A stretch of DNA of 64,000 bases, taken from positions 1 through 64,000 of the IMG/VR virus record IMGVR_UViG_3300025930_000007; one strand, 5' to 3'. The notes beneath the pieces were generated by a model that was given only the letters and a program-made list of their open reading frames with translations, ran no database searches and was not told where the DNA came from. This document shows, in pieces, positions 1,001-48,211 of this stretch; positions within the stretch are counted from its first letter, which is position 1, and each line of letters opens with the position of its first letter. The position numbers and the translations under genes were made by a program.

Positions 1001-1104
1001 TTGCTACCGAGAGCTCCTTGAAGTAGACTTTGTAAGTCGAAGGTCTCCTCCCCCGGGATCTTCTTGATCCGTTAACGGATGTCCGCCCAAGGGAGAATCC
1101 CTTG
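1001..1104 (+). promoter_or_regulatory. Sigma70-type promoter plus conserved leader element, copy 1
   Basis: TTGCTA-17-TAGACT; hairpin GAAGGTCTC/CTCCCCC/GGGATCTTC; TCCGCCC at 1082-1088; SD and TTG start inside CCAAGGGA-GAA-TCCCTTGG hairpin. Confidence 0.8.
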
Positions 1105-3165
1105 GCCTCTCGCCTCCCAGACGGTTCCATTCAACTCTCCGATGGACGCATCGTCTACGCGAACTCCGTCATTTTGGGCGCTGATCTCTGCGAGATCGTG
1201 CCTCTGTGCGTTCCGCCGCCGGCGTGGCCCTTCGTTTCGGGTGGCGGCGGCGGTGGCGCGGGCCCGCAAGGCCCCGCGGGACCTGCAGGGTCGGGCGGCG
1301 GCGGTGCCGGCACGCAAGGCCAGCAGGGTTTCCAGGGAACAAATCCCGGACCTGCAGGACCGCAGGGTAATAACGGACCTCAGGGCTTCCAGGGCCTGGC
1401 AGGATCTGGAGCCCAGGGCCCTCAAGGTCTGCTTGGAAGCCAGGGAAATCAAGGGACTGCCGGAACCCAAGGCTTCCAGGGCCTGACCGGCGCCGGAGTT
1501 CAAGGCGCTCAGGGAAATCAGGGAACCGCGGGAACTCAGGGCTTCCAGGGCTTTCAAGGCGGCCTGAACCCCGACCTCTTCGCTTCGACCCGCATTGTCA
1601 GTTTGATCCCGGGAGAGGGGACAGATCTCACCATCTCTGCGGCTATCGCGGCATTGCCAGCCGCGGGCGGTGACATTTACGTCAAGCCCGGGACATATCC
1701 GATCGCAGCCTCGCTGGACTTCACCACCAAAGTGGTGAGGATCCGCGGCGCTGGGACCAGCATGAACTTCGCAACCGGACCTACGACACTGGTTCCTGCC
1801 GCAGGAATCTCGCTCTTCAAAAACGGCGCTGCGGGCTGCTCTATCGAGGACATGACCATTGAGGGAGACAACACCTCAGCCCAGGTCCTTTACGAGGGCA
1901 GCACCGATATCCGCTTCACCCGCATAGACTGCCACGATGTTGCGGGCATCATCAAGGGGACGCCTGAAGCCCTCTTCCGCGACTCCTTCGTGAACATCCC
2001 GAGCGGTCCTGCAGTCGGCGACCGGTTCTTCTGGCAGGGCGGCGCGGCCGGCGGGACGCTCATCTGGGACAATCTGGAAGTTTTCATCACCGGGTCGGGA
2101 GCGACCTTGATGAGCGGCGTCACGGCAGGCGCCAACGGTCCGACGTTCAAGGTCGTGAACTCCTACACCGGCGGCGGTGGCGGCGGCGGTGCGACGAACT
2201 TCTGGTTCGCCCAGGTCATCGACTGGGTCAACTTCGATTTCGACAATGGCCAGTTCGAGATCAGTGGCGCCCGGAACAACATCGTCAACTGCAACTTCCT
2301 GGACTGCTCGATCAAGTTCCTCGCCGTCTGGAACTTCGTCTCCAATTCCAACTTCTCCCAGGGCGGAACGAATGGCGGCGGCGGGATCTTCGATGCTCAG
2401 TTGTCCTTTGTCCAAAGCCTTGCCGGATTCCCGATCCAGAGCACCGTGACGGGGTGCAACTTCTACGGAAACGCTGTCTCCAACAAAGGTATCTCGATCA
2501 CGGGTCCCGCCGGTGCCTCGAGCGTTTCGGTGACGATCAGCGGCTGCAACTTCAGCAACCACACGCTGAACGACATCTACATCTCTGCCGGCCTGGACAT
2601 CATGATCACCGGATGCGTCTTCGACCACAGCACGGGAGCGAATGTCGACGCGATCGAGATCGTGGCTGGAGCGTCCTTCTCCGGCAGGGTCAATATCGTC
2701 GGGAATACCTTCGGAAGCGGCTATGCGCTTACCGTCAGTACCGCAGGGTTCAACGGCACCATCGCGAACAATATCAACCTTCTCACCGTATCCGACACAG
2801 GGAACGGCAACATCTGGACGGGCAATACAAATTTCGATCCCAGCGGAATCACCGGCAGCGCGGCATCAGACCTCATCAACGACACCAACGTCATCGGTCC
2901 AGTTGCGGCAGACACTCTTCTGAATCTTTTCTATCGGACTGTTACGGTAGACGCGAGCGGAGCTGCCCGGACCATCACGCTACCCACGGCCGCTTCCGCC
3001 AAGTGGCGGAAGTACATCATCAAGAAGGTCGATGCCTCGGCCAACACGGTTACCGTGGACGCGGACGGCGCCGAAACGATCGATGGCGCTCTGACATACG
3101 TTCTGATCGCGCAGTATCAGAGCGTCGAGATCCAGAGCGACGGTTCGACCTGGTGGATCATCTAG
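1102..3165 (+). CDS. Collagen-stalk fibre protein 1 with pectin-lyase-like beta-helix head
   Basis: Shared N-terminus MASRLPDGSIQ..PPPAWPF, G-X-Q repeats, 'AAIAALPAAGGDIYVKPGTY' tailspike-type motif, C-terminal 'TITLPTAA..KKVDASANTVTV..ETIDG' domain. Confidence 0.85.
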   Translation: MASRLPDGSIQLSDGRIVYANSVILGADLCEIVPLCVPPPAWPFVSGGGGGGAGPQGPAGPAGSGGGGAGTQGQQGFQGTNPGPAGPQGNNGPQGFQGLAGSGAQGPQGLLGSQGNQGTAGTQGFQGLTGAGVQGAQGNQGTAGTQGFQGFQGGLNPDLFASTRIVSLIPGEGTDLTISAAIAALPAAGGDIYVKPGTYPIAASLDFTTKVVRIRGAGTSMNFATGPTTLVPAAGISLFKNGAAGCSIEDMTIEGDNTSAQVLYEGSTDIRFTRIDCHDVAGIIKGTPEALFRDSFVNIPSGPAVGDRFFWQGGAAGGTLIWDNLEVFITGSGATLMSGVTAGANGPTFKVVNSYTGGGGGGGATNFWFAQVIDWVNFDFDNGQFEISGARNNIVNCNFLDCSIKFLAVWNFVSNSNFSQGGTNGGGGIFDAQLSFVQSLAGFPIQSTVTGCNFYGNAVSNKGISITGPAGASSVSVTISGCNFSNHTLNDIYISAGLDIMITGCVFDHSTGANVDAIEIVAGASFSGRVNIVGNTFGSGYALTVSTAGFNGTIANNINLLTVSDTGNGNIWTGNTNFDPSGITGSAASDLINDTNVIGPVAADTLLNLFYRTVTVDASGAARTITLPTAASAKWRKYIIKKVDASANTVTVDADGAETIDGALTYVLIAQYQSVEIQSDGSTWWII

Positions 3166-3175
3166 TGAGCGTGCG

Positions 3176-3955
3176 ATGAGTTTTCTTGAATCGAAGGTTA
3201 AAGGATCGATCGCGGTCGGCCGTGGGGATGGGGTAGGAATCCTTCCGGTTGGACCAGATGGCCAGGTCATTATAGCCGACAGCACTCAGCCTCTGGGAGT
3301 CAAGTACGGTAACAATGCCAGCGCCGTTGCAATGTCCATGGAGTCCCTCGCCCTCACGCAATACTTCTCAAATCTCGGGCTCAAGCCAAGCGTGCAGATC
3401 AAGTCCATGACGGAATCTCTGGACACGTTCGATGGCGTGTCCGGGGCCGGCGTGTTCAGCTATGACGGATCTCGCGCCAAGGAGACCGCCATCGCGTCGA
3501 CGTATGCCCGCTATGGTCTTGGTGCCGCGTACACGAAACTGTTGATGATCGTCGGAATGTTTCGCATGTCCACGGCAAACATGGGCATCTGGATCGCCGA
3601 CACGCTTGCGGCAAACGTACCGCAGGACGGAAATATATTCCTGAACGAGATGAACACCAATCGGACATCTCTTTATAAGCTTCCTGCTTTCTCGAACGTG
3701 ACATCGGATACGGATGTCAGCAGCACCCCGCAAACGTGGGCGCCGTACCCGATGATGGCAATTCACGTTGACCTGTCCCTGGCAACGCGCCGGATTCGCT
3801 GCTACTACCGTTGGAACGCCGAAATGTGGTGGCCTGTTCTCGACGTCGCGGACAATACGAAGATCGCCATTACGCAGATGCAGCACGCAGGCGTGCAGTT
3901 CAATTCGGGTCCAGGATTTGTCGGGTGCCCATTTGGAATTTGGGCTGACCTGTAA
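3176..3955 (+). CDS. Fibre-associated protein
   Basis: N-terminal 'KGSIAV..LPVGPDGQVIIADS' resembles a recurrent phage fibre repeat. Confidence 0.65.
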   Translation: MSFLESKVKGSIAVGRGDGVGILPVGPDGQVIIADSTQPLGVKYGNNASAVAMSMESLALTQYFSNLGLKPSVQIKSMTESLDTFDGVSGAGVFSYDGSRAKETAIASTYARYGLGAAYTKLLMIVGMFRMSTANMGIWIADTLAANVPQDGNIFLNEMNTNRTSLYKLPAFSNVTSDTDVSSTPQTWAPYPMMAIHVDLSLATRRIRCYYRWNAEMWWPVLDVADNTKIAITQMQHAGVQFNSGPGFVGCPFGIWADL

Positions 3956-4002
3956 GAAAATTCTGGTACCGGAACGACAAGATGAAGGCAGTGTTATCTC
4001 GC

Positions 4003-4111
4003 TTGCATTCCATCCGGTCATACACTAGAATTTCCTAGTCGGAGGTCTCCTCCCCCCCCTGAGGCCTCCCTGATTTCGAACTGTCGATCCGCCCCCGACC
4101 GGGGTTTCATG
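4003..4111 (+). promoter_or_regulatory. Promoter plus conserved leader element, copy 2
   Basis: TTGCAT-17-TAGAAT; hairpin GGAGGTCTC/C-rich loop/GAGGCCTCC; TCCGCCC at 4088-4094. Confidence 0.8.
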
Positions 4112-5077
4112 GCGATCAGGCTACCGGACGGCTCCATCCAGATGTCGGATGGGCGTATCATCTACGCCAATTCCATCATTCTCGCAAATGATCTGATCGA
4201 ACTCCTTCCGCTACTCATACCTCCGCCGGCGTGGCCTTTCGTCTCCGGCGGCGGTGGCGGCGGCCCAGGTCCTCAGGGGCCCGCGGGTCCCGCGGGCAGC
4301 GGCGGCGGGGGTGGCGGCGGGAGCCAGGGCACCCAAGGGTTCCAGGGAACAAATCCTGGAGTACAAGGACCTCAAGGGTTTTCCGGCGCGGCTGGAACGC
4401 AAGGCAGTCAGGGAAATCAAGGCTTCACTGGAACCGGCGCTCAAGGATTCCAAGGCCTCGGAGGTCCGCAGGGAAATCAAGGCCTCGTTGGATCTGGAGC
4501 ACAAGGAAACCAAGGCGATGAAGGGCCTCAGGGCAATCAAGGCCCTGGTGGTGCGGCCGGCGGTCCTCAAGGCAATCAAGGTCCTCAAGGCCCTCAAGGC
4601 ATCGCCGGGGTTCAGGGACCCCAGGGCTTCCAAGGATTCCAGGGCACCGGAGTCCAGGGACCACAGGGCATTCTTGGCACTCAGGGGAATCAGGGCTTCC
4701 AGGGAACCAGCGGAGCTGGCGCCGCAGCAATCTTCCAGAATGTCCAGGAAAACACACTTACCACGACGGATGCAACACCCACCGTCATTCTATCCGAGAC
4801 TATTGCGGCCGCGACAGTTGGAACTTTCCGAGTCGTGGTCGATGCTCGCTATGATGACGGATCTCTGCATGCAAGCTTCGTAAAGACAGTGAAGGTCGTG
4901 CGTGAAGGGGCCGGCGCGATTCTCGGAACGGAGAATTCCGACTATACCGACGATGAGAGCCTGGCGCTCACCGCAACGTTCACCGTTTCAGGGAACGACA
5001 TCCAAGTCACGGTGATCGGCGTCGCGGCGACCAGCATTACCTGGAAAGCGAGGATGGGTAGAGTCAATCTACCCTGA
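4109..5077 (+). CDS. Collagen-stalk fibre protein 2 with short beta-rich head
   Basis: Shared N-terminal anchor, long G-X-Q run, about 115-aa C-terminal domain. Confidence 0.85.
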   Translation: MAIRLPDGSIQMSDGRIIYANSIILANDLIELLPLLIPPPAWPFVSGGGGGGPGPQGPAGPAGSGGGGGGGSQGTQGFQGTNPGVQGPQGFSGAAGTQGSQGNQGFTGTGAQGFQGLGGPQGNQGLVGSGAQGNQGDEGPQGNQGPGGAAGGPQGNQGPQGPQGIAGVQGPQGFQGFQGTGVQGPQGILGTQGNQGFQGTSGAGAAAIFQNVQENTLTTTDATPTVILSETIAAATVGTFRVVVDARYDDGSLHASFVKTVKVVREGAGAILGTENSDYTDDESLALTATFTVSGNDIQVTVIGVAATSITWKARMGRVNLP

Positions 5078-5083
5078 TGAAAT

Positions 5084-5655: not shown

Positions 5656-5670
5656 GGAAGGGGAAATTAG

Positions 5671-5973: not shown

Positions 5974-6086
5974 GCACGATGATCATCAGTCCAATCGTCA
6001 TCATCGATACTTCCTCGGCAAATCCTCAGATCGTCGAGCAGAGCGCTGGAACAGTCGGGGTGGCGATCTCCGTGATGGTGGTGTAG
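5970..6086 (+). CDS. Very small hypothetical protein (38 aa)
   Basis: ATGA overlap with upstream stop, GGGAGG SD, fills the gap exactly. Confidence 0.4.
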   Translation: MSTMIISPIVIIDTSSANPQIVEQSAGTVGVAISVMVV

Positions 6087-6087
6087 G

Positions 6088-7954: not shown

Positions 7955-7994
7955 GCTAGAAGGAGGGGGCGGCATTTCCGCCCCCTCCTTTAGC
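7955..7994 (+). terminator. Long hairpin, probable terminator
   Basis: GCTAGAAGGAGGGGGCGG..CCGCCCCCTCCTTTAGC inverted repeat right after the stop. Confidence 0.6.
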
Positions 7995-8008
7995 TCACAT
8001 TATTCCTC

Positions 8009-8113
8009 TTGCTGTAAAGCTTGATGCCCTGTAGAATCTCCTAGTCGGAGGTCTCCTCCCCCGGGACCTTCTGGATCCTGTAAACGGACGTCCGCCCAAG
8101 GGAGATTCCCTTG
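8009..8113 (+). promoter_or_regulatory. Promoter plus conserved leader element, copy 3
   Basis: TTGCTG-17-TAGAAT; GGAGGTCTC/CTCCCCC/GGGACCTTC; TCCGCCC at 8091-8097; SD and TTG in a hairpin. Confidence 0.8.
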
Positions 8114-10156
8114 GCTTCTCGTCTACCAGACGGCTCAATTCAGCTCTCCGACGGCCGCATCGTCTACGCCAACTCTCTCATCCTTGGCGCTGATCTCTGC
8201 GAGATCGTGCCTCTGTGCGTTCCGCCGCCGGCGTGGCCCTTCGTCTCGGGCGGCGGCGGCGGCGGCGCGGGCCCGCAAGGCCCTGCGGGACCTGCAGGAT
8301 CTGGCGGCGGCGGTGCCGGAACTCAAGGGCAACAGGGCTTCCAGGGGACGAATCCTGGACCTGCAGGTCCGCAGGGAAATAATGGGCCTCAGGGCTTTCA
8401 AGGCTTGGCAGGATCTGGAACCCAGGGCTTCCAGGGAAGCAGTGGGCTTCAGGGAAATCAGGGAAACCAAGGTCTCACTGGAAGTCAGGGAAACCAGGGG
8501 AACCAGGGGAATGCCGGCGCTCAGGGCAATCAGGGAAATCAAGGAACCGCGGGAACCCAGGGCTTCCAGGGATTCCAAGGCCCATCGAATGCTGGTGCCG
8601 ATATCTTCGCAGCCACTCGCGTGGTCAGTCTCATTCCTGGCGATGGAACGGATCTGACCATTGCCGCGGCGATCGCGGCGCTGCCGGCTGAAGGCGGCTA
8701 CATCTACGTCAAGCAGGGGACCTATCCACAGGCCGCGACGTTGACGATGCCGGACAAACCCGTCATCATCAGGGGCTCGGGCGATGGCACCGTCATCTCT
8801 CTCGGCGCGAACGCCATCCCGGCGTTCACGATTCCCACTGGCTTGAGCGTCCGGCGCGACTATGTGTTCGAAAACATGCTCGTCACTGGCACCTCGGTTG
8901 CCAATCAAAAGATCTGGAGCATCGAGGATGCCAATGGCTTCGGTGTGGTCAGGGCGAGCCATGTAAACTCCACGGAAATCCAGTTCCCCATCCACATCAC
9001 GGACGGCTTCGGAACCGAGATTACGACCGTCTGCCTGGACGACTGCCACTTCCGCTTGCTGGCCGATGGATCGAGCATCCTGGTCAATCAACCAGCGCTC
9101 ACGGCCGTGCCCACGAACGTGTGGATGCAGCGCGTCTGGTTCTATACCGAATACTCCGATGCGATCACTGGAGCGCTTACCAGCGATGCTGTCTTTGCCA
9201 CAAGCATCAACTTCCTGGGAGAAGATTGCGTTCTGGCCATCGGCACGAGCTCGATTGTCGGGTGCTTGAATCTTACGGACAGCCATATCTTCAACTTCGG
9301 CCCGGGCGCGAACCCGGTCATCTCAGTATTTGGCGATGACTTCGGCATCATCCCCGACTGCCTCGTAGGCTGCAGCGGTCAGTTCGTCAACTTCAGCTTG
9401 GAAGGAAACGGCTGCGCCGTGATTGGCGGCAGGTATCGCTCCTGCAGTTTCACGGATGGAGCGATCAGCTTCTTCACGGACATATTCTTCTTCACTGATC
9501 TTACGGTGGAGTCGGCCGTCATCATCGGCACCGGCAATACATTCATCAAAGGCTGCGAGTTCACGAACAAGGGCACAACCTTCGTCCTGGACGGGAACTT
9601 TGCATCCATCGTCGGTTGCGAGTTCTCTCTGATCAGCTATGTCGGGCTGACCTCCGTCATCCGGACTACGAATGGTACCGCGAAGATCGCCGACAACCGC
9701 TTCGTGGCGAACACGGTGCCGGCGATCCTGGAAGCTGGTGCCATCTCCACGAACAATATCGACAATAACCGGTGGGCTACCAATCCGACGCTTCTGAATG
9801 ATTCCGACGCGGTCGTGAACGGCTTCAAGCGGAAGAACATCACTGGCGGCGCGACCGTAGATGCCTTGACGGCGGTCTTTACGCACGTAAATGACAAAGG
9901 TTTGGCCGGGGCAGGAAGCCTCAAGAACACTGGCGCGAATGACCTGACGGTCAGACGGACCGTGACCGACGGTTACGGAACGACCGACTTCCAGGAAGAT
10001 GTGGTTCTGTCGGGCGCGTCGATTCAATGGCCCATGGACACCGCCATCGGGACGGCGTTCTCAGCGTATGTGTCCTTCACGATCTCCGTCAAGTCGACCA
10101 CGCCGGGGAGTCCGACGACCTATGATCTCAGGCACTCTTCGACGGGAGCATACTGA
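8111..10156 (+). CDS. Collagen-stalk fibre protein 3, beta-helix head plus C-terminal 'KNTGAN' domain
   Basis: Shared anchor, G-X-Q repeats, 'IYVKQGTY' motif. Confidence 0.85.
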   Translation: MASRLPDGSIQLSDGRIVYANSLILGADLCEIVPLCVPPPAWPFVSGGGGGGAGPQGPAGPAGSGGGGAGTQGQQGFQGTNPGPAGPQGNNGPQGFQGLAGSGTQGFQGSSGLQGNQGNQGLTGSQGNQGNQGNAGAQGNQGNQGTAGTQGFQGFQGPSNAGADIFAATRVVSLIPGDGTDLTIAAAIAALPAEGGYIYVKQGTYPQAATLTMPDKPVIIRGSGDGTVISLGANAIPAFTIPTGLSVRRDYVFENMLVTGTSVANQKIWSIEDANGFGVVRASHVNSTEIQFPIHITDGFGTEITTVCLDDCHFRLLADGSSILVNQPALTAVPTNVWMQRVWFYTEYSDAITGALTSDAVFATSINFLGEDCVLAIGTSSIVGCLNLTDSHIFNFGPGANPVISVFGDDFGIIPDCLVGCSGQFVNFSLEGNGCAVIGGRYRSCSFTDGAISFFTDIFFFTDLTVESAVIIGTGNTFIKGCEFTNKGTTFVLDGNFASIVGCEFSLISYVGLTSVIRTTNGTAKIADNRFVANTVPAILEAGAISTNNIDNNRWATNPTLLNDSDAVVNGFKRKNITGGATVDALTAVFTHVNDKGLAGAGSLKNTGANDLTVRRTVTDGYGTTDFQEDVVLSGASIQWPMDTAIGTAFSAYVSFTISVKSTTPGSPTTYDLRHSSTGAY

Positions 10157-12302: not shown

Positions 12303-14645
12303 ATGGCTATTCGGCTTCCAGACGGCTCGATCCAGATGGCGGACGGGCGTATTCTCTACGCCAACTCCGTCATCCTCGCAGCCGATCTGATCGAGATCCT
12401 TCCGCTCCTCACGCCTCCGCCGGCGTGGCCTTTCGTCTCGGGCGGCGGCGGCGGCGGCGCGGGCCCGCAAGGCCCCGCGGGACCTGCAGGATCGGGCGGC
12501 GGCGGCGCCGGCACGCAAGGCCAGCAGGGTTTCCAGGGAACGAATCCCGGACCTGTAGGACCGCAGGGCAATAACGGACCTCAGGGCTTCCAGGGCCTGG
12601 CGGGATCCGGAGCTCAGGGCTTCCAGGGAAGCAATGGGCCTCAGGGAAATCAGGGGACTGCCGGAACTCAGGGCTTCCAGGGTCTTACGGGGGCTGGAGT
12701 TCAAGGAAACCAGGGAAATCAGGGCATTGCCGGAGCTGGAACTCAAGGGTTTCAGGGTAATCAGGGCCTGACCGGTGCAGGAGTTCAGGGAAACCAAGGC
12801 AATCAAGGATTGCAAGGGTTCCAAGGTCTAACAGGTGCAGGGACTCAAGGTCCCCAAGGGCCTCAGGGTCTACAGGGGAGTCAAGGTTTCCAAGGCATCA
12901 CAGGAGCTGGAGTCCAGGGCGCGCAGGGACTCCAAGGCCCATCCAGTGCGGGCGCTGACATCTTCGCCGCGACACGCGTCGTCAGCCTGATCGCTGGCGA
13001 CGGCACCGATCTGACGGTAGCCGCCGCGATTGCTGCACTTCCGGCCGAGGGCGGCCGGATCTACGTGAAACAGGGGACGTACACGCTCGCCGCGACGAAC
13101 TCGCTGCCGGACAAGCCGGTCGACATCATCGGCTCCGGCGACGGCACGATCTTCGACCTGACCACGAGCGCCATCGCCGCCTTCACGATCCCGGACATTC
13201 TCACGGAGCGTCGATCCTACACCTTCCAGAACTTCAAGGTGATCGGGAACTCGACAGCCAGCCAGAACGTCGTCGAAATCGCGGATTCCCAATTCTTCGC
13301 GGTCACGAGCATCAAGCGCGTGAACACCGAGGGCATCAAATTCCCCGTCGAGATCACGGGCGGCGGCTTCTCCGCGACCGAGGCCACCCAGATCGAAATC
13401 GAAGACTCCTGGTTCGTCCCCGTTGCGGCTGGTGACGGCGCCCTCGCCAATAACAGCGGGTTCACGAGCTCAGTAGCGGTCACGTGCCGGAACGTGAACT
13501 TCTACGATCCGAACGATAATACGATCGGCGGCACGATCAACAACGACAACTTCTCGAGCCTGGACATCGTCTTCTACGACTGCAACATCTCCTACACCGG
13601 GGAAGACGGCCTCAATACGATCCGGGCTGAGAACAGCAGGATCTTCAACTATCTCGGTCAGGGCGTCGCCACGAACCCGAACTCGATCTTTCTGGGCGGC
13701 CTTGGCGTAGACGACAATAACATCCACCCCTCGTGCTCCTTCGTGAACTGCAACGTCGTGGGAATGTCCTGGATCTTCGGCGAGCAGGTCACCGCCACCG
13801 GTGGCTGGTGGGATTCGAACGTCGTCCAGGCAGAAGTTGTAAACGGGAAATGTACTTTTGATGGGGTTGTCTTCCGCTGCGCCGCGGACGTTCCGCAGTT
13901 CCCGCACTTCGGGACGGACCCCACCGCATATATTCGGGACGGCGGCGAGCTCAATATCATCGGGTGCCGCTTTACGAACCCTGGCGGCCTCGTGAACCGC
14001 TACATCGAAGCTGCGGACTCGATGTACATCGCCTTCTGTGCCTTCGCCAACCAGGCGGCCGGGGCGAATAATTGCGGCATCCATGTAACGGGCCCGAACA
14101 ACATCATCGTCGGCTGCGACTTCGATGCTCTTTGGGCGGCTCCTCCGATCAAGGAGGAAGGTGCCAATGCCGTCGCGAACAACTATACCGACTGCATTGG
14201 CTTGAACGGCAACGGCGGCACGGAGTCGGTCTACGTGACGCCATCGAATATCAGCCCCTCGACCTTCAACGGTTCGGCGCTCTTCCACGCGACAGGGTCG
14301 ACCACCGACGCCCTTGTTGTGATCAAAATGACCCTCTCCGGCCTGGGCACGTCGGACTCCGGCACGAGGATCAACCCGGCTGGCCTGACCGGGCAAGGCA
14401 CGATCAAGAACACGGGTGCCCAGTCCATGGACGTGAAGGAAACGGTTACGGATGCCTTCGGGGTTACCGATAGCGTGACTACGACAGTCACTGCAGGAAA
14501 CGACCTCCTCCTTACGATGGCCGTGAATATAAACACGGCGCGGCCACCCTATGTGTCCTATAAGATCGAGGTAAAGAGCACTGCGGCTGGCGTTCCTACG
14601 ACCTACAGCTACCAGCACACCATGAACTCCGAGGTGACTTGGTGA
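12303..14645 (+). CDS. Collagen-stalk fibre protein 4, beta-helix head plus 'KNTGAQ' domain
   Basis: Shared anchor, G-X-Q repeats; head N- and C-termini homologous to fibre 3. Confidence 0.85.
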   Translation: MAIRLPDGSIQMADGRILYANSVILAADLIEILPLLTPPPAWPFVSGGGGGGAGPQGPAGPAGSGGGGAGTQGQQGFQGTNPGPVGPQGNNGPQGFQGLAGSGAQGFQGSNGPQGNQGTAGTQGFQGLTGAGVQGNQGNQGIAGAGTQGFQGNQGLTGAGVQGNQGNQGLQGFQGLTGAGTQGPQGPQGLQGSQGFQGITGAGVQGAQGLQGPSSAGADIFAATRVVSLIAGDGTDLTVAAAIAALPAEGGRIYVKQGTYTLAATNSLPDKPVDIIGSGDGTIFDLTTSAIAAFTIPDILTERRSYTFQNFKVIGNSTASQNVVEIADSQFFAVTSIKRVNTEGIKFPVEITGGGFSATEATQIEIEDSWFVPVAAGDGALANNSGFTSSVAVTCRNVNFYDPNDNTIGGTINNDNFSSLDIVFYDCNISYTGEDGLNTIRAENSRIFNYLGQGVATNPNSIFLGGLGVDDNNIHPSCSFVNCNVVGMSWIFGEQVTATGGWWDSNVVQAEVVNGKCTFDGVVFRCAADVPQFPHFGTDPTAYIRDGGELNIIGCRFTNPGGLVNRYIEAADSMYIAFCAFANQAAGANNCGIHVTGPNNIIVGCDFDALWAAPPIKEEGANAVANNYTDCIGLNGNGGTESVYVTPSNISPSTFNGSALFHATGSTTDALVVIKMTLSGLGTSDSGTRINPAGLTGQGTIKNTGAQSMDVKETVTDAFGVTDSVTTTVTAGNDLLLTMAVNINTARPPYVSYKIEVKSTAAGVPTTYSYQHTMNSEVTW

Positions 14646-16518: not shown

Positions 16519-17709
16519 ATGGCTACGCGGCTTTCAGACGGCTCGATCCAGATGGCGGATGGGCGTATCCTGTACGCCAACTCCGTCATCCTCGCAGCCG
16601 ATCTGATCGAGATCCTTCCGCTCCTCATTCCGCCTCCGGCATGGCCTTTCATTTCCGGTGGCGGCGGAGGCGGCGCTGGAACTCCTGGAGCGCGCGGTGC
16701 AGACGGAGCTCCTGGAGCGAATGGCCCTCAAGGCTTCCAGGGACAGAATGGTGCCTTCGGCGGCCCCCAAGGCTCGCAGGGCTTCCAAGGCATGGATGGG
16801 GGTGAGGGGTTCCAAGGCAATCAGGGCTTCCAGGGAACGGGTGCTCAGGGTCCTCAGGGAACGAATCCTGGCGCTCAGGGGCCGCAAGGAAACTTTGGAG
16901 CCCAAGGCTTTCAGGGCTTTCAGGGCATCGATGGGACTCAAGGTACCCAGGGCATTCAAGGGCTGCAGGGAACCAATCCTGGCGTTCAAGGCCCGCAGGG
17001 CAACGACGGGATGCAGGGGATCAACGGTACGCAGGGCCTTCAGGGTTTCCAAGGCAATGAAGGCCTTCAGGGCCTGCAGGGAACGAACCCGGGCGTCCAA
17101 GGGCCTCAGGGCAACCAAGGCTTCCAAGGGATGAACGGAGTCGACGGACCGCAGGGTTTCCAGGGCATTCAGGGCCTGCAGGGAACGAATCCCGGCGTTC
17201 AAGGGCCTCAGGGCAACCAAGGGTTTCAGGGAACGGGAGCGCAAGGCCTGCAGGGTTTCCAAGGCTCCGGCGGCCTTCTCGGGTTTCAAGCACAGGATGC
17301 CGGCACTCTAAGTATCAGCGCGGCTAGTGGAGTCACGGATCTGCCGTCATCCACGCTCAGCTTCACCTTGGCCGCCACCACGCGCGTCGAGTTTTTTGCG
17401 ACCATTTTCAGCAATCAGATGTCACAAGGCCAGCCGGACTCCGGATTCTCCGGCCGTACGCTCCTGCGCGACGTCGGGAACGCGATCACCTACGATCTGG
17501 TTCAGCATGTGAATGCTGGCGCTACCGGTGGAGCTGGCTCATGGACCGGGACAATCGATGCGGGCGTTAGCGGTCGCCGTCTTTTGACGCTTGCTGCCGG
17601 GTCATACACCTTCAAGCTCCAAGCCGTCTGCGACAGCGGTACGGGACTGGACACATTGAATTACACATATCCGCTCGTCTTTACGGTCAAGGACTACGGG
17701 CCGCCGTAA
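16519..17709 (+). CDS. Collagen-stalk fibre protein 5
   Basis: Shared anchor, about 200 aa of G-X-Q, beta-sandwich-like head. Confidence 0.85.
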   Translation: MATRLSDGSIQMADGRILYANSVILAADLIEILPLLIPPPAWPFISGGGGGGAGTPGARGADGAPGANGPQGFQGQNGAFGGPQGSQGFQGMDGGEGFQGNQGFQGTGAQGPQGTNPGAQGPQGNFGAQGFQGFQGIDGTQGTQGIQGLQGTNPGVQGPQGNDGMQGINGTQGLQGFQGNEGLQGLQGTNPGVQGPQGNQGFQGMNGVDGPQGFQGIQGLQGTNPGVQGPQGNQGFQGTGAQGLQGFQGSGGLLGFQAQDAGTLSISAASGVTDLPSSTLSFTLAATTRVEFFATIFSNQMSQGQPDSGFSGRTLLRDVGNAITYDLVQHVNAGATGGAGSWTGTIDAGVSGRRLLTLAAGSYTFKLQAVCDSGTGLDTLNYTYPLVFTVKDYGPP

Positions 17710-17782: not shown

Positions 17783-17906
17783 TTGCTTCCTCGGCTCCTT
17801 AAGCGTAAACTTCTAGTACGTCCCGGGCCTCCCCCGGCCTTGGGCTGAGCATTCCAGAGCGTCTTTTCCGCCCAATCTTGGATTATGTCATGAGGCGGAA
17901 TTGATG
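17783..17906 (+). promoter_or_regulatory. Promoter plus conserved leader element, copy 4
   Basis: TTGCTT-17-TAAACT; CCCGGGCC/TCCCCC/GGCCTTGGG; TCCGCCC at 17867-17873 can pair with GGCGGA just before the start. Confidence 0.75.
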
Positions 17907-24824: not shown

Positions 24825-25111
24825 CGATGGCGATTCCGGGCGAAGGTTACGTCGATCGCGGGAAGCTCCAATACTTCGGTGGCCGACCATTCGTCTCGGA
24901 TGGGGAGTTCAAGGCTCCCGCGGCCCCTTGCGAACACGCCCTGCTGATCGGGAAGGTCAGGGAAGACTCTGAAATGGGAGTCTGGCGCATCCCGCTGACC
25001 TACGTCATCTTCAAGGGGCATCCCGAGGAATATAAGACTGAAGGCTACTGCGTCCATTGCGCGCTGGCCTATTTGATGCGGTCTCAGGGACGCGAAGAAG
25101 GGATCCCTTGA
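24821..25111 (+). CDS. Small hypothetical protein with C..H..CxxC
   Basis: ATGA overlap with the upstream stop. Confidence 0.55.
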   Translation: MTMAIPGEGYVDRGKLQYFGGRPFVSDGEFKAPAAPCEHALLIGKVREDSEMGVWRIPLTYVIFKGHPEEYKTEGYCVHCALAYLMRSQGREEGIP

Positions 25112-25202
25112 AAGTCCTGGCGCTAAGGATTAGACTCTAATTAGCCCGTCCTCCCCAGGCGGGTTTTGTTTCAAGGCTCCGCCCGGTTGAAGGCGCATCG
25201 TG
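25108..25202 (+). promoter_or_regulatory. Promoter plus conserved leader element, copy 5
   Basis: TTGAAA-17-TAGACT; AGCCCGTC/CTCCCCA/GGCGGGTT; TCCGCCC at 25178-25184. Confidence 0.75.
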
Positions 25203-26405: not shown

Positions 26406-26469
26406 AATTCCCTTTCCAGCCATCGGTAAACGCGGTATTATCCCTTCGATAAAATGTCGAGGGGGATAA

Positions 26470-29400: not shown

Positions 29401-30105
29401 AAGATGATCGAGGAATGGCCGATCCTCGATTACGACCGCATGGAAGATCCTCGCATCCGGGCGATCTATGCTGGACCCCTAGTCTCCGTCGTCATTCCGA
29501 CCTACAAGCGGGCCGAGCTGCTTAATCGAGCCATTTCATCGGCGCTTGCCCAGGATTACGCCAATATCGAAGTGATCGTCGTCGGTGATAAGTGCCCTGA
29601 TCTTGCGGAACTGATACCGCTCGGTCCTCCGCCAGATCGCGTCCGGCTGTTCAATCTGGTCCACAATCATGGCGCCGGCGGTGCCGTTCCGCGCAATCAT
29701 GCGATCGCCGCGGCCGGCGGTTCGCTCATCGCCTACTTGGATGACGACAATGTCTGGAAGTCGGATCACGTCTCATCGCTCTATACGGCGATGATGGAAA
29801 ATGGAGCCTCGTTCGCCTTTTCATCCATGGAAGTGAACGGTACCGACCTCAAATTCTCGGAACCGAAACACGGTAGCATCGACACGTCATGCATCCTCCA
29901 TCGGAAGAACCTCGTGGAGAAGTACGGAGGCTGGAAGGACCGGACGAAGGCAAATTACTATCACGATTGGGAGTTCGTGAGTCGCTGGGTGAATGGTAGC
30001 GAGAGGTGGGTGGCTACCAGGAAGCCGACGCTGATCTATAACGCGGAGACCTGCGGACAGCGTGAATTCCTCGAGGCGCTTGCCTTGTCGAAGGCATCCA
30101 AGTAG
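26470..30105 (+). CDS. Multi-domain glycosyltransferase with five GT2-type modules
   Basis: Five strand-1 plus DxD-type sets: LISVYTGTYN/LDHDD, LTVIVPSIP/FVDDDD, VSFIVL/MNNDA, VIVIAKDEE/IDPDE, VSVVIPTYKR/LDDDN. Confidence 0.85.
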   Translation: MPIAGIKLLIIGPAIQLPYECKVISDSAAILPTIAQFQPDVIMTTAFIPGSLNSATFELRKRWIHVPANTSPEAARQAVENCYLSNIWAVHQYQAANPLISVYTGTYNTGDYLRDTYQSLRDQTYANWEWVVIDDHSNDGTWERLEALAKDDIRVRPYRSGKRLEKIGAVKDQATRLSKGVYLVELDHDDMLTDFALADIRDAFEKNPEVGFVYSNSSNFFENGQFHRFDDEFWKNRYRETEYRGKKWLECLNPDIYDRFGPDFQQQFGWFLTVGPNHVRAFRAKTLFELGGYNPSLPVADDWDLYARFFLYSKCHHVDKMLYLYRFKDNWANTTFTRNKAIQDHLQLGRGNYAAAFKAFNEQRQRSASTGGGELLLTVIVPSIPSRMESLYGVLNDLFKQADGKPVEIVCLLDNRKSNLSEKRNQAIKNAKGRFISFVDDDDKIEPDYVDQILEAIKTNPKADCVVFDVLVHGYTPEPKLCAYGIEYEQGENETSYLRKPNHVMAYRTEISRKHEYRKDLSAISEDTEWAERASKDIQSQARISKTLYHYFYNPKTTTQLMPAPGQRTLKDVSFIVLEAAETALTKRCIQSIREHAPGSEVVYVSNGVISCPDRKADVQVDFNVNLGFAAGCNAGAAAATRPILCFMNNDAAFVDDTPAKLLAGLSDANPITAPFSNKAKPPQGDIPRAAVPKTDVFPDMVVGLCMMIPKALFQELDGFDPDLLTYEDDEFCRKAAIKGFKPKVVANTWVDHERHETFKKLGLDVDKVMAKNALIYRKKNPVIRVIVIAKDEEKALPGFFKQFEQITRDWCVLDTGSKDRTEILAKDLGCRVEKGPFEDFASARNDAVSRFGAGADWIIMIDPDERLDEHTLKHLKELLYRTTDDILYSMLQAKYPDGSIRRFVSKPFIWRNKPEIKWVFKVHEKLIGSKHQAVVVNSMNTHLIELHEDGRRQAASGFYDALMKAEPYFTDPAYKRKMIEEWPILDYDRMEDPRIRAIYAGPLVSVVIPTYKRAELLNRAISSALAQDYANIEVIVVGDKCPDLAELIPLGPPPDRVRLFNLVHNHGAGGAVPRNHAIAAAGGSLIAYLDDDNVWKSDHVSSLYTAMMENGASFAFSSMEVNGTDLKFSEPKHGSIDTSCILHRKNLVEKYGGWKDRTKANYYHDWEFVSRWVNGSERWVATRKPTLIYNAETCGQREFLEALALSKASK

Positions 30106-30185
30106 AATTCTGAGACAGCAGGAAGGTCTCCCCCGACCCGTCCCTGGTGATTTGCTTGGTCCGCCCCCGTCAGCCTATACCCATG
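30080..30185 (+). promoter_or_regulatory. Promoter plus conserved leader element, copy 6
   Basis: TTGCCT-17-TAGAAT (the -10 overlaps the GT stop codon); GGTC/TCCCCC/GACC; TCCGCCC at 30160-30166. Confidence 0.7.
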
Positions 30186-30742: not shown

Positions 30743-30835
30743 TTGCCCATAAGTCATTCTAGCGCTACACTTCGTTAGCCCTTTCCCCAAAGGGTCTTTG
30801 GCATTAGGTATCCGCCCTCGGCCCGTGTGGTGATG
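30743..30835 (+). promoter_or_regulatory. Promoter plus conserved leader element, copy 7
   Basis: TTGCCC-17-TACACT; GCCCTTT/CCCC/AAAGGGT; TCCGCCC at 30811-30817. Confidence 0.75.
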
Positions 30836-31289: not shown

Positions 31290-31727
31290 ATGGACAAGAA
31301 GAAGAGGGTCCTGGTTGTCGAGGACGACAATGGAATCCGATTGGCCATCTCCAGCATCTTGGAGCGCCAGGGATACGAAGTGACCAACGTCACCGACGGC
31401 GAGAAGGCAATGGAACAGGTGGACAAGGCCGACGTCGTCCTGCTGGATATCTTTCTGCCCAAGATCACGGGGGACGAGTTCCTGAGACGGATCCGAAACA
31501 AAGGGAATATGGTGCCCGTCGTCCTCATGAGCGCCGCAATGCCGGAGGCTGAAGCAATGGAATGCTTCAAGCCATTCAAAGTGGTCGATTACGTGGCAAA
31601 GCCGTTCCGAACCAAGGAACTGGTCGAGAAGGTCAACAAAGCGGCTTCAATCGCGGACAATCTTTCCGTGGTCAAGAACACGGCGGATCGACTGAAGGGC
31701 TTCATCAGCCGGCAGGCGGCTCTCTGA
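31290..31727 (+). CDS. Single-domain response regulator (CheY-like receiver)
   Basis: 'VLVVEDD', 'LLDIFLPKITG', 'LMSA', 'KPF'. Confidence 0.9.
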   Translation: MDKKKRVLVVEDDNGIRLAISSILERQGYEVTNVTDGEKAMEQVDKADVVLLDIFLPKITGDEFLRRIRNKGNMVPVVLMSAAMPEAEAMECFKPFKVVDYVAKPFRTKELVEKVNKAASIADNLSVVKNTADRLKGFISRQAAL

Positions 31728-32328: not shown

Positions 32329-32460
32329 TTGAATTTCATAGCCCATCCCGTATAATCAAGTCGCCTTCCCCCAAGGCACCTGTAGTGGTCTGGCAGACAA
32401 TTCCGCCCAACGAGACAATATGTCTATTTGCAACTTGAGTGGCGGAGAAAAAAAATCATG
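32329..32460 (+). promoter_or_regulatory. Promoter plus conserved leader element, copy 8
   Basis: TTGAAT-16-TATAAT; GCCTT/CCCCC/AAGGC; TCCGCCC at 32402-32408 can pair with GGCGGAG (the SD) before ATG 32458. Confidence 0.75.
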
Positions 32461-33258
32461 ACGGCTCCGCAAATCTATCCTTTCGTCGTTGATCAGACTC
32501 GCCATGGGGGCACGGGATCGGGCCAACGTCATGGATTCAACCTGATGGCCGGTCCGCGCTGGAAGACGGATCCCAATGCCGCTCCCCAGCAGCAAGCCCA
32601 TGCTCCGGCCCCGGTTCAAGCCATGGTCCGCCAGGAAATCGCGCCTCCTCCCATGAGGCTCGGAGAACTGGGGTACGGACTCATGGCGGCTCCGCAGCTT
32701 ACGGCGGACCAGGTCAAGGCCATTCAGACTGCGGCGGGTCCGCTCGTCGAGGCGATCCGGACGGAGCTCGAGGGCCTCAAGCTTGAAGGAAGAACGCTCA
32801 GTCCTGAGAGCATCCGGGAAAACCCGGATATCTACAAGAGCATCAGCGAACTGGGGCTTTACTTCACGCCGGCCGAGATGCGGACTCAGGTCATCACGGA
32901 TACCAAGGCCTTGATGGGTGAGGCGTCGCGTCTTCTTACGGGCGCGGTAGCGTCCTATCTGACAGAACCCCAGGTGACGGCCCTCAATACGGCTGTCAAT
33001 GATTCCAGGGATCTCATCGCCTATCTTCAGCAGTTCGACATCAGCCCGGTGACGGGCGCAAAGTCGAAGCTGTCGGACGATGAAGTCAAGCAACGCCTTA
33101 CCGCTATCCGCTCCGCGGTCGCGGATACCGAAAAGATGGTCGTCTCACAGGAAGCTCCAAGCGTTCCAGTCGCCGAAGACAGCGGAAGCACGATCGGCAC
33201 GATCATCGCGCTTGGCGTGCTTGCGGCCGTGGGTTGGTATCTGATCGATCAAGGGTAG
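32458..33258 (+). CDS. Helical protein with RLGE leader motif and C-terminal TM
   Basis: 'PPMRLGE'; TM 'IGTIIALGVLAAVGWYL'. Confidence 0.75.
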   Translation: MTAPQIYPFVVDQTRHGGTGSGQRHGFNLMAGPRWKTDPNAAPQQQAHAPAPVQAMVRQEIAPPPMRLGELGYGLMAAPQLTADQVKAIQTAAGPLVEAIRTELEGLKLEGRTLSPESIRENPDIYKSISELGLYFTPAEMRTQVITDTKALMGEASRLLTGAVASYLTEPQVTALNTAVNDSRDLIAYLQQFDISPVTGAKSKLSDDEVKQRLTAIRSAVADTEKMVVSQEAPSVPVAEDSGSTIGTIIALGVLAAVGWYLIDQG

Positions 33259-43651: not shown

Positions 43652-43659
43652 GAGGCATC

Positions 43660-44091: not shown

Positions 44092-44094
44092 GAA

Positions 44095-45137: not shown

Positions 45138-45144
45138 TGATGCT

Positions 45145-45576: not shown

Positions 45577-45577
45577 G

Positions 45578-47637: not shown

Positions 47638-47642
47638 GGCTC

Positions 47643-48077
47643 ATGGGCTGCAGCCCTGGCGCTATTTCCTTCGGAAAAGAACTCAGCCAATTCCTTTCCA
47701 ACCTCCTCTACATGAAAGAATGGTGGACCCATGGAGGATGTTGGACGCTTGCCCAAGCACTTCACGAATACCTGGGAGACGATCGCACGGAGCTCTGGGG
47801 TATTGGAAGTCCATTTGCCGGAACTGCGTATCACGTGGCAGTGAAGGCGGATGACTGTTTCTTTGATGCGGACGGAGCTTCTACGCTTGAGCAGATTCTG
47901 AAGCGCTGGAAAAAGAAGTTTCCGGGGCAATACTTGATTGCGAGGAAGCTTTCGGACAATGAAAAGAAGACCCTTCTCTGTAAAGATTCCGAAGACTTCG
48001 CTGTCGAGGAAATGGTCGATCAACTGACGTTAAAGCTAGGCCCATCCGAACTCCTCTGGAGGCGATTTTTCTCTTAA
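47643..48077 (+). CDS. Small protein with papain/transglutaminase-like Cys-His-Asp pattern (candidate protease)
   Basis: 'GGCWTLAQALH', 'YHVAV', 'FFDADG'. Confidence 0.6.
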   Translation: MGCSPGAISFGKELSQFLSNLLYMKEWWTHGGCWTLAQALHEYLGDDRTELWGIGSPFAGTAYHVAVKADDCFFDADGASTLEQILKRWKKKFPGQYLIARKLSDNEKKTLLCKDSEDFAVEEMVDQLTLKLGPSELLWRRFFS

Positions 48078-48084
48078 AAAGGGC

Positions 48085-48211
48085 TTTTCTTACAGGCTTC
48101 CCTATAGTAATATTCAGGCAGTTCCCAAGGCGTCCTCCCCCGACGCCGCAAGAGCTGCCTCACGGCAATCTTGCATTGAACTAAATCCGCCCGCGGAGAT
48201 CCTTTGCAATG
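48085..48211 (+). promoter_or_regulatory. Conserved leader element, copy 9 (promoter match weaker)
   Basis: GGCGTC/CTCCCCC/GACGCC; TCCGCCC at 48186-48192; TATAGT/TAATAT upstream. Confidence 0.7.

What the first reader, a model, noticed from the sequence alone, without database searches (positions are those of the whole stretch)
1082..48211. The UCCGCCC element tends to base-pair over the ribosome-binding site
Seen: in copies 1 and 3 its 3' Cs start a hairpin (CCAAGGGA..TCCCTTGG) burying both the SD and the TTG start. In copies 4 and 8, TCCGCC is complementary to GGCGGA just before the start. Copy 2 has CCCC/GGGG, copy 5 has CGCC/GGCG and copy 9 has TCCG/CGGA pairings. Copies 6 and 7 show no clear pairing. 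Inference: default translational repression that is relieved when a trans factor captures UCCGCCC, like a natural toehold switch.
Basis: partly seen in the sequence, partly recalled or inferred. Interest (0 to 1): 0.75.

Follow-up and report, generated by a model that had tools for sequence, protein, structure and literature searches.

The report
Conserved C-rich leader cassette, jumbo phage
UCCGCCC is a real, unchanging 7-letter word in the 5' leaders of about 17 operons of an uncultivated soil jumbo phage, always downstream of a host-type promoter and usually of a C-loop hairpin; it pairs with the ribosome-binding site in only a few leaders, so it is more likely a shared recognition signal than a general self-repressing switch.

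Summary
TCCGCCC is not enriched overall (16 copies vs 21.9 expected). It is enriched in upstream regions (14 vs 3.4).

Each listed copy belongs to a larger cassette:
- a sigma70-like promoter;
- a hairpin at the transcript 5' end with a yCCCCC loop;
- 12-38 nt of spacer;
- UCCGCCC;
- a start codon, mostly 17-25 nt downstream.

The 266-kb phage genome holds about 17 such leaders. Metagenomic relatives down to 53% protein identity keep them: hairpin stems and spacers change, the 7-mer does not.

In folding ensembles the real word pairs with the RBS no more than composition-matched permutations (21 leader families: 1.63 vs 1.61 bp, p=0.89). RBSs of genes without the word are equally complementary to it.

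Only copies 4 and 8 have a motif-specific UCCGCC:GGCGGA helix over the SD. In the copy 8 family it is kept in 9/9 relatives, together with a conserved coupled uORF.

Best reading (confidence 0.4): a recognition word for a shared, unidentified trans-acting factor acting next to the RBS. The toehold-like model is plausible for a minority of leaders. No factor was found and no transcript data exist.

The parts
1001..1104 (+). Leader 1. -35 TTGCTA 1001-1006; -10 TAGACT 1024-1029; hairpin 1039-1063 (loop CUCCCCC); UCCGCCC 1082-1088; RBS hairpin CCAAGGGAGAATCCCTTGG 1086-1104, which includes the TTG start at 1102. The gene is a collagen-like tail fibre.
4003..4111 (+). Leader 2. -35 TTGCAT 4003-4008; -10 TAGAAT 4026-4031; hairpin 4041-4069 (loop CUCCCCCCCCU); UCCGCCC 4088-4094; ATG 4109. 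The gene is a paralogous tail fibre.
8009..8113 (+). Leader 3, a near copy of leader 1. -35 8009-8014; -10 8032-8037; hairpin 8047-8071; UCCGCCC 8091-8097; TTG 8111.
17783..17906 (+). Leader 4. -35 TTGCTT 17783-17788; -10 TAAACT 17806-17811; hairpin 17825-17840 (extendable); UCCGCCC 17867-17873; 4-codon mini-uORF 17890-17904; GGCGGA 17894-17899 pairing with the word; main ATG 17904.
25108..25202 (+). Leader 5. Promoter 25108-25136; hairpin 25143-25165 (loop CUCCCCA); UCCGCCC 25178-25184; GTG 25200.
30080..30185 (+). Leader 6. Promoter 30080-30108; short hairpin 30125-30138; UCCGCCC 30160-30166; ATG 30183. No SD and no pairing.
30743..30835 (+). Leader 7. -35 TTGCCC 30743-30748; -10 TACACT 30766-30771; hairpin 30778-30795 (loop CCCC); UCCGCCC 30811-30817; ATG 30833.
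32329..32461 (+). Leader 8. Promoter 32329-32356; hairpin 32363-32377; UCCGCCC 32402-32408; 13-codon uORF 32420-32461, whose TGA overlaps the main ATG at 32458; GGCGGA 32441-32446 (the SD of the main ORF) pairing with the word.
48103..48211 (+). Leader 9. -10 TATAGT 48103-48108 (-35 unclear); hairpin 48129-48147 (loop CUCCCCC) inside a longer outer stem; UCCGCCC 48186-48192; ATG 48209.

Best explanation
UCCGCCC is one of two short C-rich modules of a clade-specific, promoter-proximal 5'-leader cassette. The other module is a hairpin at the transcript 5' end with a yCCCCC loop.

Host RNA polymerase starts at a sigma70-type promoter (inferred from consensus only). The RNA begins with the hairpin, whose structure is supported and whose loop sequence is conserved. 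The single invariant word UCCGCCC lies 12-38 nt further on, directly 5' of the ribosome-binding site.

I propose that the word, probably with the loop, is the address label of a regulon of about 17 operons. Several of these are virion and tail-fibre operons. An unidentified trans-acting factor, a C-rich-RNA-binding protein or a G-rich RNA of phage or host, would read the label. It would then set translation initiation or mRNA fate at the adjacent start codon.

In a minority of leaders (the families of copies 4 and 8, and weakly 1/3, 5 and relatives of 7) the fixed word has also been recruited into a helix with the SD or start codon. In the copy 8 family this is combined with a conserved, translationally coupled 11-13-codon uORF.

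Shown: the cassette's anatomy, its conservation, hairpin covariation, invariance of the word, and the lack of general RBS pairing. Inferred: action at RNA level, the existence of a trans factor, and an effect on translation.
For: - Composite anatomy in 16 leaders of the genome, plus two with the word but no hairpin.
- Promoter-like sites confirmed by the scan tool at 25108, 30080 and 32329.
- The word and the loop are among the eight most enriched 7-mers in upstream regions.
- 13 of 14 leader C-runs have flanking stems of at least 5 bp, against 12.9% for background C-runs (p=3e-11). Compensatory stem changes occur among orthologues.
- The word is exact in every orthologous leader found by synteny in relatives of 53-91% protein identity and 56-65% GC, while spacers diverge.
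- All leader copies are in the sense orientation.
- The word lies 17-25 nt before a start codon in 13 of 18 leaders. In the two long outliers a small uORF begins at +18 or +23.
- The uORF with its ATGA overlap is conserved 9/9.
- Distance to the promoter varies: about 45-85 nt from the -10 hexamer (46 at leader 8, 83 at leader 9). This argues against a promoter-linked DNA site.
- No Rfam family covers it.
Against: - No trans factor was identified. No NusG, sigma70, S21, S1, CSD, RRM, KH or RegA domain is detectable in the genome. No G-rich non-coding partner was found either.
- No transcript data: the single RNA run gave one 207-nt contig. TSSs and RNA-level action are therefore inferred.
- SD strength of genes with the word is not significantly weaker than that of other genes (median -5.9 vs -6.4 kcal/mol, p about 0.1). 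There is thus no evidence that the word substitutes for an SD.
- Closeness to the start codon could simply reflect compact leaders.
- The hairpin occurs without the word in at least 6 promoter leaders, and the word occurs without the hairpin in 2, so the modules may have separate functions.
Confidence: 0.4

Rival explanations
1. One reading: UCCGCCC is a cis anti-RBS that keeps every leader translationally off until a trans factor sequesters it, like a natural toehold switch.
For: - Motif-specific helices over the SD in copies 4 and 8, kept in 2/3 and 9/9 family members.
- In relatives of copy 7, CCC(A/G)UGG can pair with UCAUGGG at the start.
- A 4-bp CGCC:GGCG helix is invariant in the copy 5 family.
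- Copies 1 and 3, and relative L144:6398, bury the SD and the TTG start in a hairpin that begins in the word.
Against: - Across 17 leaders and across 21 families, the real word pairs with the RBS no more than permuted words (p=0.55 and 0.89). It does not lower RBS accessibility: 0.44 vs 0.41, if anything more open.
- RBSs of genes without the word are equally complementary to it.
- About 12 of 17 independent leaders show no specific pairing, and several have no SD to hide.
- L001:3479 keeps the word without the GGCGGA partner.
- No paired position covaries.
Confidence: 0.15
2. A co-transcriptional signal. The hairpin plus the linear word would act like boxB plus boxA (nut), put, or the ops/RfaH and LoaP leader elements. 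It would load an antitermination or elongation factor onto RNA polymerase at the start of each long operon.
For: - Promoter-proximal position, a hairpin with a conserved loop plus a short linear word, and one site per operon in many operons.
- Several sites head long structural or glycosylation operons.
- This rests partly on established knowledge of nut, rrn, ops and LoaP leaders.
Against: - No NusG-like (NGN) domain in the phage, and no recognisable N or Q gene.
- The word bears no resemblance to boxA or ops.
- The word hugs the start codon rather than the promoter, and in two families it is integrated with the SD and a uORF.
- Downstream terminators were not examined.
Confidence: 0.15
3. 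An mRNA stability or processing signal. The 5'-terminal hairpin would protect against 5'-end-dependent decay, and UCCGCCC would be a cleavage or entry site for a host or phage ribonuclease or for Rho. That would time the decay or attenuation of these transcripts.
For: - The hairpin begins 6-9 nt after the -10 hexamer in most leaders, that is, at the very 5' end of the RNA. This is the arrangement known to stabilise mRNAs such as ompA (established knowledge).
- C-rich words resemble Rho-binding YC-rich RNA.
Against: - The conserved loop sequence is not needed for a simple protective hairpin.
- The leaders are not G-poor over 60-80 nt, as rut sites are.
- No 5'-end data.
Confidence: 0.12
4. A DNA-level site: an asymmetric 7-bp operator for a phage DNA-binding protein acting as a roadblock or activator downstream of these promoters.
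For: - Exact conservation of a short word near promoters.
- The genome clearly uses DNA operators elsewhere, namely the palindrome GGTAAACnnnGTTTACC inside another promoter class.
Against: - The distance to the promoter varies by about 40 bp, while the distance to the start codon is tight.
- Orientation is strictly sense.
- The word is non-palindromic and only 7 bp long.
- It occurs with RNA-level features: a covarying hairpin and helices with the SD.
Confidence: 0.1
5. No function of its own: the word hitch-hikes in a promoter cassette that spread by duplication or recombination, as PeSL cassettes do in T4-like phages.
For: - Leaders 1, 2 and 3 and the one at 87279 precede paralogous tail-fibre genes.
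- The same promoter-hairpin cassette precedes different genes in relatives: window 30160 versus L001:14298 and L007:14371.
Against: - Between non-orthologous leaders only the promoter hexamers, the C-run and the 7-mer are shared. Stems and spacers are unrelated.
- Within orthologous leaders the word stays exact while its neighbours diverge.
Confidence: 0.05

Closest known systems
Start-Associated Sequences (SAS) and extended SAS of Cluster K mycobacteriophages (Pope et al. 2011, PMC3203893)
   Same: Both are short asymmetric words repeated 11-19 times per phage genome, in one orientation, just upstream of start codons. Both are conserved across subclusters in front of unrelated genes. About half of the SAS copies come with an upstream inverted repeat. 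The function is still unknown, and a host or phage RNA or protein partner has been proposed.
   Different: - SAS (GGGATAGGAGCCC) is 13 nt, contains the SD itself and lies 3-7 nt from the start. UCCGCCC is 7 nt, pyrimidine-rich, and lies 5' of the SD with 10-18 nt from its end to the start.
- The ESAS repeats have conserved sequences and do not support RNA pairing, so they were thought to be DNA sites. Here the stems are unrelated in sequence but complementary, with a conserved loop.
- SAS lie in non-structural regions. These leaders include tail-fibre and structural regions.
- There is no sequence relationship.
Cis anti-SD elements and engineered toehold or riboregulator switches
   Same: In leaders 4 and 8 a C-rich upstream word pairs with the SD (UCCGCC:GGCGGA). 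An opener binding the word would free the SD.
   Different: Most leaders lack such a helix. The word is fixed rather than co-varying with its target. No trigger RNA was found.
C-rich (UCCC) hairpin loops of Staphylococcus and Listeria sRNAs that target SD sequences (Geissmann et al. 2009, PMC2790875)
   Same: A C-rich heptaloop presented on a short stem, complementary to G-rich SDs. Several SDs in these leaders are GGGAG or GGGGG.
   Different: Here the loop sits in cis at the 5' end of the mRNAs themselves. Loop-RBS complementarity is no higher than for genes outside the family.
nut sites (boxA + boxB), rrn leader boxB-boxA, and ops/JUMPstart leaders
   Same: A hairpin with a conserved loop plus a short linear word in the promoter-proximal leader of operons.
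   Different: There is no sequence similarity and no cognate factor gene. The word is tied to the start codon rather than to the promoter.
PeSL promoter/stem-loop cassettes of T4-like phages (PMC2839356, PMC4122927)
   Same: A repeated composite of a sigma70-type promoter and a stem-loop between genes of a large phage. It may serve as a point of modular exchange.
   Different: In PeSLs the stem-loop is a terminator joined to an early promoter. Here the hairpin is downstream of the promoter, has no U-tract as a rule, carries a conserved loop, and is followed by the 7-mer.

Membership tests
Cis-repressing anti-RBS / toehold-like switch | The element base-pairs with the SD or start codon in the default fold, more than control sequences do | tested here: not met
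   17 leaders: 1.71 vs 1.53 expected bp (p=0.55). 21 families: 1.63 vs 1.61 (p=0.89). Only 2 leaders are motif-specific.
Cis-repressing anti-RBS / toehold-like switch | RBS accessibility is lowered by the element | tested here: not met
   Mean unpaired probability of the RBS zone is 0.447 vs 0.436 and 0.44 vs 0.41.
Cis-repressing anti-RBS / toehold-like switch | A trigger RNA, or other opener, complementary to the element exists | tested here: inconclusive
   Every non-coding place in the genome that scored as a GGCGGA + G-run site lies opposite a copy of the word itself or in the tRNA array. Host RNAs could not be searched because the host is unknown.
Cis-repressing anti-RBS / toehold-like switch | Helix supported by covariation | tested here: inconclusive
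   The UCCGCC:GGCGGA helix is invariant on both sides in 9/9 sequences, so there is no covariation. The 3' arm is also the SD and uORF codons.
SAS/ESAS (Cluster K mycobacteriophages) | 13-nt word GGGATAGGAGCCC containing the SD, 3-7 nt from the start | tested here: not met
   The word here is different, does not contain the SD, and its end lies 10-18 nt from the start.
SAS/ESAS (Cluster K mycobacteriophages) | Many same-orientation copies upstream of starts of unrelated genes, conserved across related phages | tested here: met
nut-type antitermination site | A boxA-like word and a boxB hairpin recognised by N/Nus factors, with a cognate antiterminator gene | tested here: not met
   No boxA consensus. 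No NusG/NGN domain in the genome. N- and Q-like genes were not specifically searched. Function is not testable here.
Any described RNA family (Rfam 15) | Match at gathering score | tested here: not met
   Only tRNAs and one tmRNA are found in the whole 266-kb genome.
PeSL cassettes | A terminator stem-loop joined to an early promoter | tested here: not met
   The hairpin lies downstream of the -10 hexamer and is not followed by a U-run, except in leader 5.
Structured RNA hairpin (5'-terminal stem-loop) | Complementary arms kept while the sequence changes | tested here: met
   13 of 14 leader C-runs have stems of at least 5 bp vs 12.9% background, p=3e-11. 3 of 4 consensus pairs in family E have compensatory changes.

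The most novel reading that the evidence does not exclude
A previously undescribed post-transcriptional regulon signal of a clade of uncultivated soil jumbo phages. It would be a bipartite C-rich leader code: a 5'-terminal yCCCCC-loop hairpin plus the invariant word UCCGCCC next to the RBS. An unknown C-rich-RNA reader, a protein or a G-rich RNA, would read it to switch on or time translation of about 17 operons transcribed by unmodified host polymerase. In some leaders this would work by melting a UCCGCC:GGCGGA anti-SD helix and driving a coupled uORF.
Probability: 0.3. Interest if true: 0.7.

Novelty: new variant of a known kind. Interest (0 to 1): 0.5.

Why it matters
Large phages that lack their own RNA polymerase or sigma factor still have to time the expression of structural genes. 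Here about 17 operons carry ordinary host-type promoters followed by the same two C-rich RNA words. These words are kept unchanged across relatives that share only about half of their protein residues. That points to control after transcription starts, through a reader that is not yet known.

Comparable start-associated words in Cluster K mycobacteriophages have remained unexplained since 2011. A second, unrelated case with clearer RNA features gives a more tractable handle: a covarying hairpin, an anti-SD helix and a coupled uORF.

For the finding as submitted, the practical message is a caution. C-rich words always look complementary to purine-rich ribosome-binding sites, so such pairings need composition-matched and non-member controls.

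Tried and rejected
- Enrichment of the bare 7-mer: none in the window.
- Sense-strand avoidance inside genes: zero in the window, but about 10 sense coding copies genome-wide on a crude gene map, so there is no ban.
- The word as an SD substitute: SD strength is not significantly different.
- Kissing of the hairpin loop with the SD: loop-RBS duplex energies are the same as for genes outside the family.
- A phage G-rich sRNA partner: none found.
- Phage RNA-binding or transcription-factor domains (NusG, sigma70 r2, S21, S1, CSD, RRM, KH, RegA): none. The RegA search rang nowhere, not even in controls, so it is uninformative.
- Terminase family search: no hit.
- GenBank phage relatives: none by DNA or by two structural-region proteins.
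- IMG/VR and GTDB scans with gene C homologues: nothing.
- Myxococcus phage Mx1, the best match of the Ro-like gene: no such leaders in its first 50 kb.
- Metatranscriptome: one RNA run with a single 207-nt contig inside a gene, so no 5' ends.
- A single covariance model of the whole cassette: abandoned. Loops of 4-11 nt shift the stem register in MAFFT alignments. Covariation was taken from orthologue families instead.
- Apparent 'reverse order' copy at 244959(-): the word overlaps the -35 of a hairpin-only promoter, so it is a chance occurrence.

Full report
WHAT THE WINDOW IS

The window is the first 64 kb of a 266,490-bp single-contig virus record (IMG/VR, linear, about 92% complete, 57.7% GC). 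It encodes several paralogous collagen-like tail-fibre proteins and large glycosyltransferases. It also carries about 40 tRNAs and a tmRNA. It has no close relative among GenBank phages. Near-identical DNA is present in many rhizosphere and soil metagenomes. It is therefore an uncultivated soil jumbo phage of unknown host.

CHECKING THE OBSERVATION

TCCGCCC occurs 16 times in the window against 21.9 expected, so the bare word is not enriched. Ten copies are on the + strand. The tenth (7977) is the 3' arm of a G+C-rich terminator-like hairpin.

Every one of the nine copies sits in the same larger arrangement. Three of the promoters were also found by the promoter scan. The arrangement is:
- a sigma70-like promoter (TTGnnn, 16-17 bp, TAnAnT);
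- 6-20 nt further on, a hairpin whose loop is C-rich (CUCCCCC, UCCCCC, CCCC);
- 12-38 nt of unrelated spacer;
- UCCGCCC;
- a start codon.

Outside the window the genome has seven more full copies: 124590+, 137763+, 144935+, 207654+, 231266-, 190805-, 188184-. Two more have the word but no hairpin (87279-, 90524+). At least six promoter-plus-hairpin leaders lack the word.

An unbiased 7-mer count in upstream regions ranks CTCCCCC (13 vs 2.0 expected) and TCCGCCC (14 vs 3.4, p=1.4e-5) among the eight most enriched words. They sit beside the SD consensus AAGGAGAT.

The hairpin is a real structure. Of 14 leader C-runs, 13 are flanked by at least 5 complementary bases, against 12.9% of all C-runs in the genome (p=3e-11). 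The stems have unrelated sequences in different leaders.

CONSERVATION IN RELATIVES

Homologues of two downstream genes exist only in metagenomes, at 48-94% and 53-91% identity. Contigs carrying them were fetched. They have 56-65% GC and hold the same cassette at the orthologous leaders.

When leaders are located by synteny rather than by the word, TCCGCCC is exact in 5/5 (family of copy 5), 7/7 (copy 7) and 10/10 (copy 8). Spacers diverge and hairpin stems change with compensation. Examples are GCCTT/AAGGC, GCGCCT/AGGCGC, ACGCCC/GGGCGT and GCCCTC/GAGGGT. In the RNAalifold consensus for family E, 3 of 4 hairpin pairs have both-sided changes. No Rfam family matches anywhere in the genome except tRNA and tmRNA.

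DOES THE WORD PAIR WITH THE RBS?

I folded 17 leaders from the predicted 5' end to 33 nt past the start and summed pair probabilities between the word and the zone from -15 to +3. The real word gives 1.71 expected pairs. The 41 other permutations of its letters give 1.53 (Wilcoxon p=0.55). The RBS unpaired probability is 0.447 vs 0.436.

Repeating this per leader family, including relatives (21 families), gives 1.63 vs 1.61 (p=0.89). The RBS zone is slightly more open with the real word, 0.44 vs 0.41.

As a second control, the RBS zones of 109 genes of the related contigs that have no word upstream bind UCCGCCC as well as the leaders that carry it: -6.0 vs -5.5 kcal/mol. A C-rich word is generically complementary to purine-rich SDs.

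Only two window leaders are specific:
- Copy 4: 6.2 vs 0.8 pairs.
- Copy 8: 3.8 vs 0.85 pairs.

Both pair through GGCGGA. GGCGG in the RBS zone is found in 2/18 window-genome leaders and 4/14 relatives' leaders, all from these two families. Among other genes it is found in 4/109.

In copies 1 and 3 the 8-bp hairpin over the SD and the TTG start is real and is kept in relative L144. It uses only the last two Cs of the word and forms with permuted words too.

Family-level consensus folds add two weaker cases. One is an invariant 4-bp CGCC:GGCG helix in the copy 5 family.

None of these helices shows covariation, because both arms are invariant. One member of the copy 4 family (L001:3479) keeps the word while its partner is replaced by GGGGAG and a palindromic hairpin.

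WHERE THE WORD SITS

The word's first base lies 17-25 nt before the start codon in 13 of 18 leaders. The two long outliers have small upstream ORFs starting at that distance:
- Leader 8 has a 13-codon uORF (32420-32461, MSICNLSGGEKKS) whose TGA overlaps the main ATG. It is conserved in frame in all nine relatives, at 11-13 codons and always ending ATGA. It contains the GGCGGAG that is both the main SD and the partner of the word.
- Leader 4 has a 4-codon uORF with a TGATG overlap. This one is not conserved in L007.

The distance from the promoter -10 to the word varies by about 40 nt. SD strength of genes with the word is only slightly, and not significantly, weaker than that of other genes.

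SEARCH FOR A PARTNER

No NusG, sigma70, S21, S1, cold-shock, RRM, KH or RegA domain was detected in the genome. No G-rich non-coding sequence complementary to both words was found: every non-coding hit lies opposite a copy of the word or in the tRNA array. The only RNA run holding the phage gave a single 207-nt contig. So there are no 5'-end data, and RNA-level action is inferred from strand specificity, hairpin covariation and the ties to start codons.

INTERPRETATION

The invariance of a 7-mer in front of unrelated genes, across relatives in which everything around it changes, is best explained by recognition by one shared trans-acting factor. A purely cis-pairing element would be free to co-vary with its partner. 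Its position immediately 5' of the RBS, and its integration with the SD and a coupled uORF in some leaders, point to translation initiation or mRNA fate as the controlled step.

It is not the general mechanism. The rivals that cannot be excluded are a nut/ops-like co-transcriptional signal, a stability or processing site, and a DNA operator. Hitch-hiking in a mobile promoter cassette is disfavoured by the conservation pattern.

COMPARISON WITH KNOWN SYSTEMS

The closest precedent is the Start-Associated Sequence of Cluster K mycobacteriophages with its extended inverted repeats. It too has many copies, one orientation, a position upstream of the starts of unrelated genes, and an unknown function. 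It differs in sequence, in containing the SD, in spacing, and in lacking RNA-pairing support.

PeSL promoter/terminator cassettes of T4-like phages and the C-rich UCCC loops of staphylococcal sRNAs share single features only.

I file the element as a new variant of a known kind, a phage-specific leader or start-associated regulon motif, and not as a member of any described family.

VERDICT

- Observation: partly confirmed.
- Interpretation: partly supported.
- The element is real, conserved and unexplained.

Noticed in passing
window 26425-26431 and 60982-60988; G000 70003, 76063, 78045, 90958, and 228105-, 206235-, 199038-, 186018- and others: There is a second promoter class: TTGACn, 5-7 nt, GGTAAAC(nnn)GTTTACC-like palindrome overlapping the -10 hexamer. 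GGTAAAC is the most enriched upstream 7-mer (10 vs 1.0 expected). It looks like an operator for a phage repressor on a different, probably early, set of host-type promoters.
   Followed up: partly
window 32420-32461: A conserved 11-13-codon uORF (MSI..GGE..) whose TGA overlaps the main ATG (ATGA). It is kept in frame in all 9 relatives examined. Its start codon sits in a conserved small hairpin (AGACA/UGUCU).
   Followed up: yes
window 7955-7995: A perfect 13-bp terminator-like hairpin whose arms read GGAGGGGGCGG / CCGCCCCCTCC. The 3' arm fuses the two leader words (UCCGCCC and CCCCUCC). Coincidence has not been excluded.
   Followed up: no
G000 65257-66981 (L011:5257-6981), just beyond the window: A Ro60/TROVE + vWA (Rsr-like) RNA-binding protein gene lies beside the tRNA/tmRNA array. 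Its best phage match is Myxococcus phage Mx1 (28% identity). No Y RNA was detected at Rfam gathering score.
   Followed up: partly
window 56589-62416, continuing to about G000 84 kb: A tmRNA (56589-56948) is followed by a dispersed array of about 40 tRNA genes.
   Followed up: no
window 51634-51725: ARAGORN, but not Rfam, calls an odd 'tRNA-???' with a 4-base anticodon.
   Followed up: no
window 1102-3165, 4109-5077, 8111-10156, 12303-14645, 16519-17709, 18567-20918; G000 86487-87257(-): A family of paralogous collagen-repeat tail-fibre genes. At least four (1102, 4109, 8111 and 86487-) share the N-terminus MA(S/I)R(L/R)PDG(S/T)IQ(L/M)SDGRI. Two use a TTG start buried in a hairpin.
   Followed up: partly
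window 31290-31727: A stand-alone response-regulator receiver-domain gene (about 145 aa) lies directly after the gene of leader 7. The Pfam assignment comes from its positional equivalents in relatives L001, L005, L008, L009, L141, L142 and L144; the window's own ORF was not scanned.
   Followed up: no
G000 237950-238030 (+): A canonical promoter (TTGACT-17-TAGATT) is followed by the word at the RNA 5' end and then a CUCCCCA-loop hairpin. It points antisense into the 3' end of a minus-strand gene (238031-239174). This may be a cis-antisense RNA carrying both modules.
   Followed up: partly
window 30080-30166 vs L001:14257-14320 and L007:14331-14393: The same promoter-hairpin-word cassette precedes different genes in different relatives: an unknown 183-aa protein here, and tail-fibre-like N-termini there. 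This suggests the cassettes are points of modular exchange.
   Followed up: no
window 26470-30105: A 1,211-aa protein with several GT2 glycosyltransferase domains. Relatives carry 1,000-1,400-aa versions with added methyltransferase domains.
   Followed up: no
window 25143-25175: The 5' hairpin of leader 5 is followed by UUUUGUUU and scores as terminator-like. The word can alternatively pair with the hairpin's 3' arm (GGCGG), which is an attenuator-like alternative seen only in this family.
   Followed up: partly
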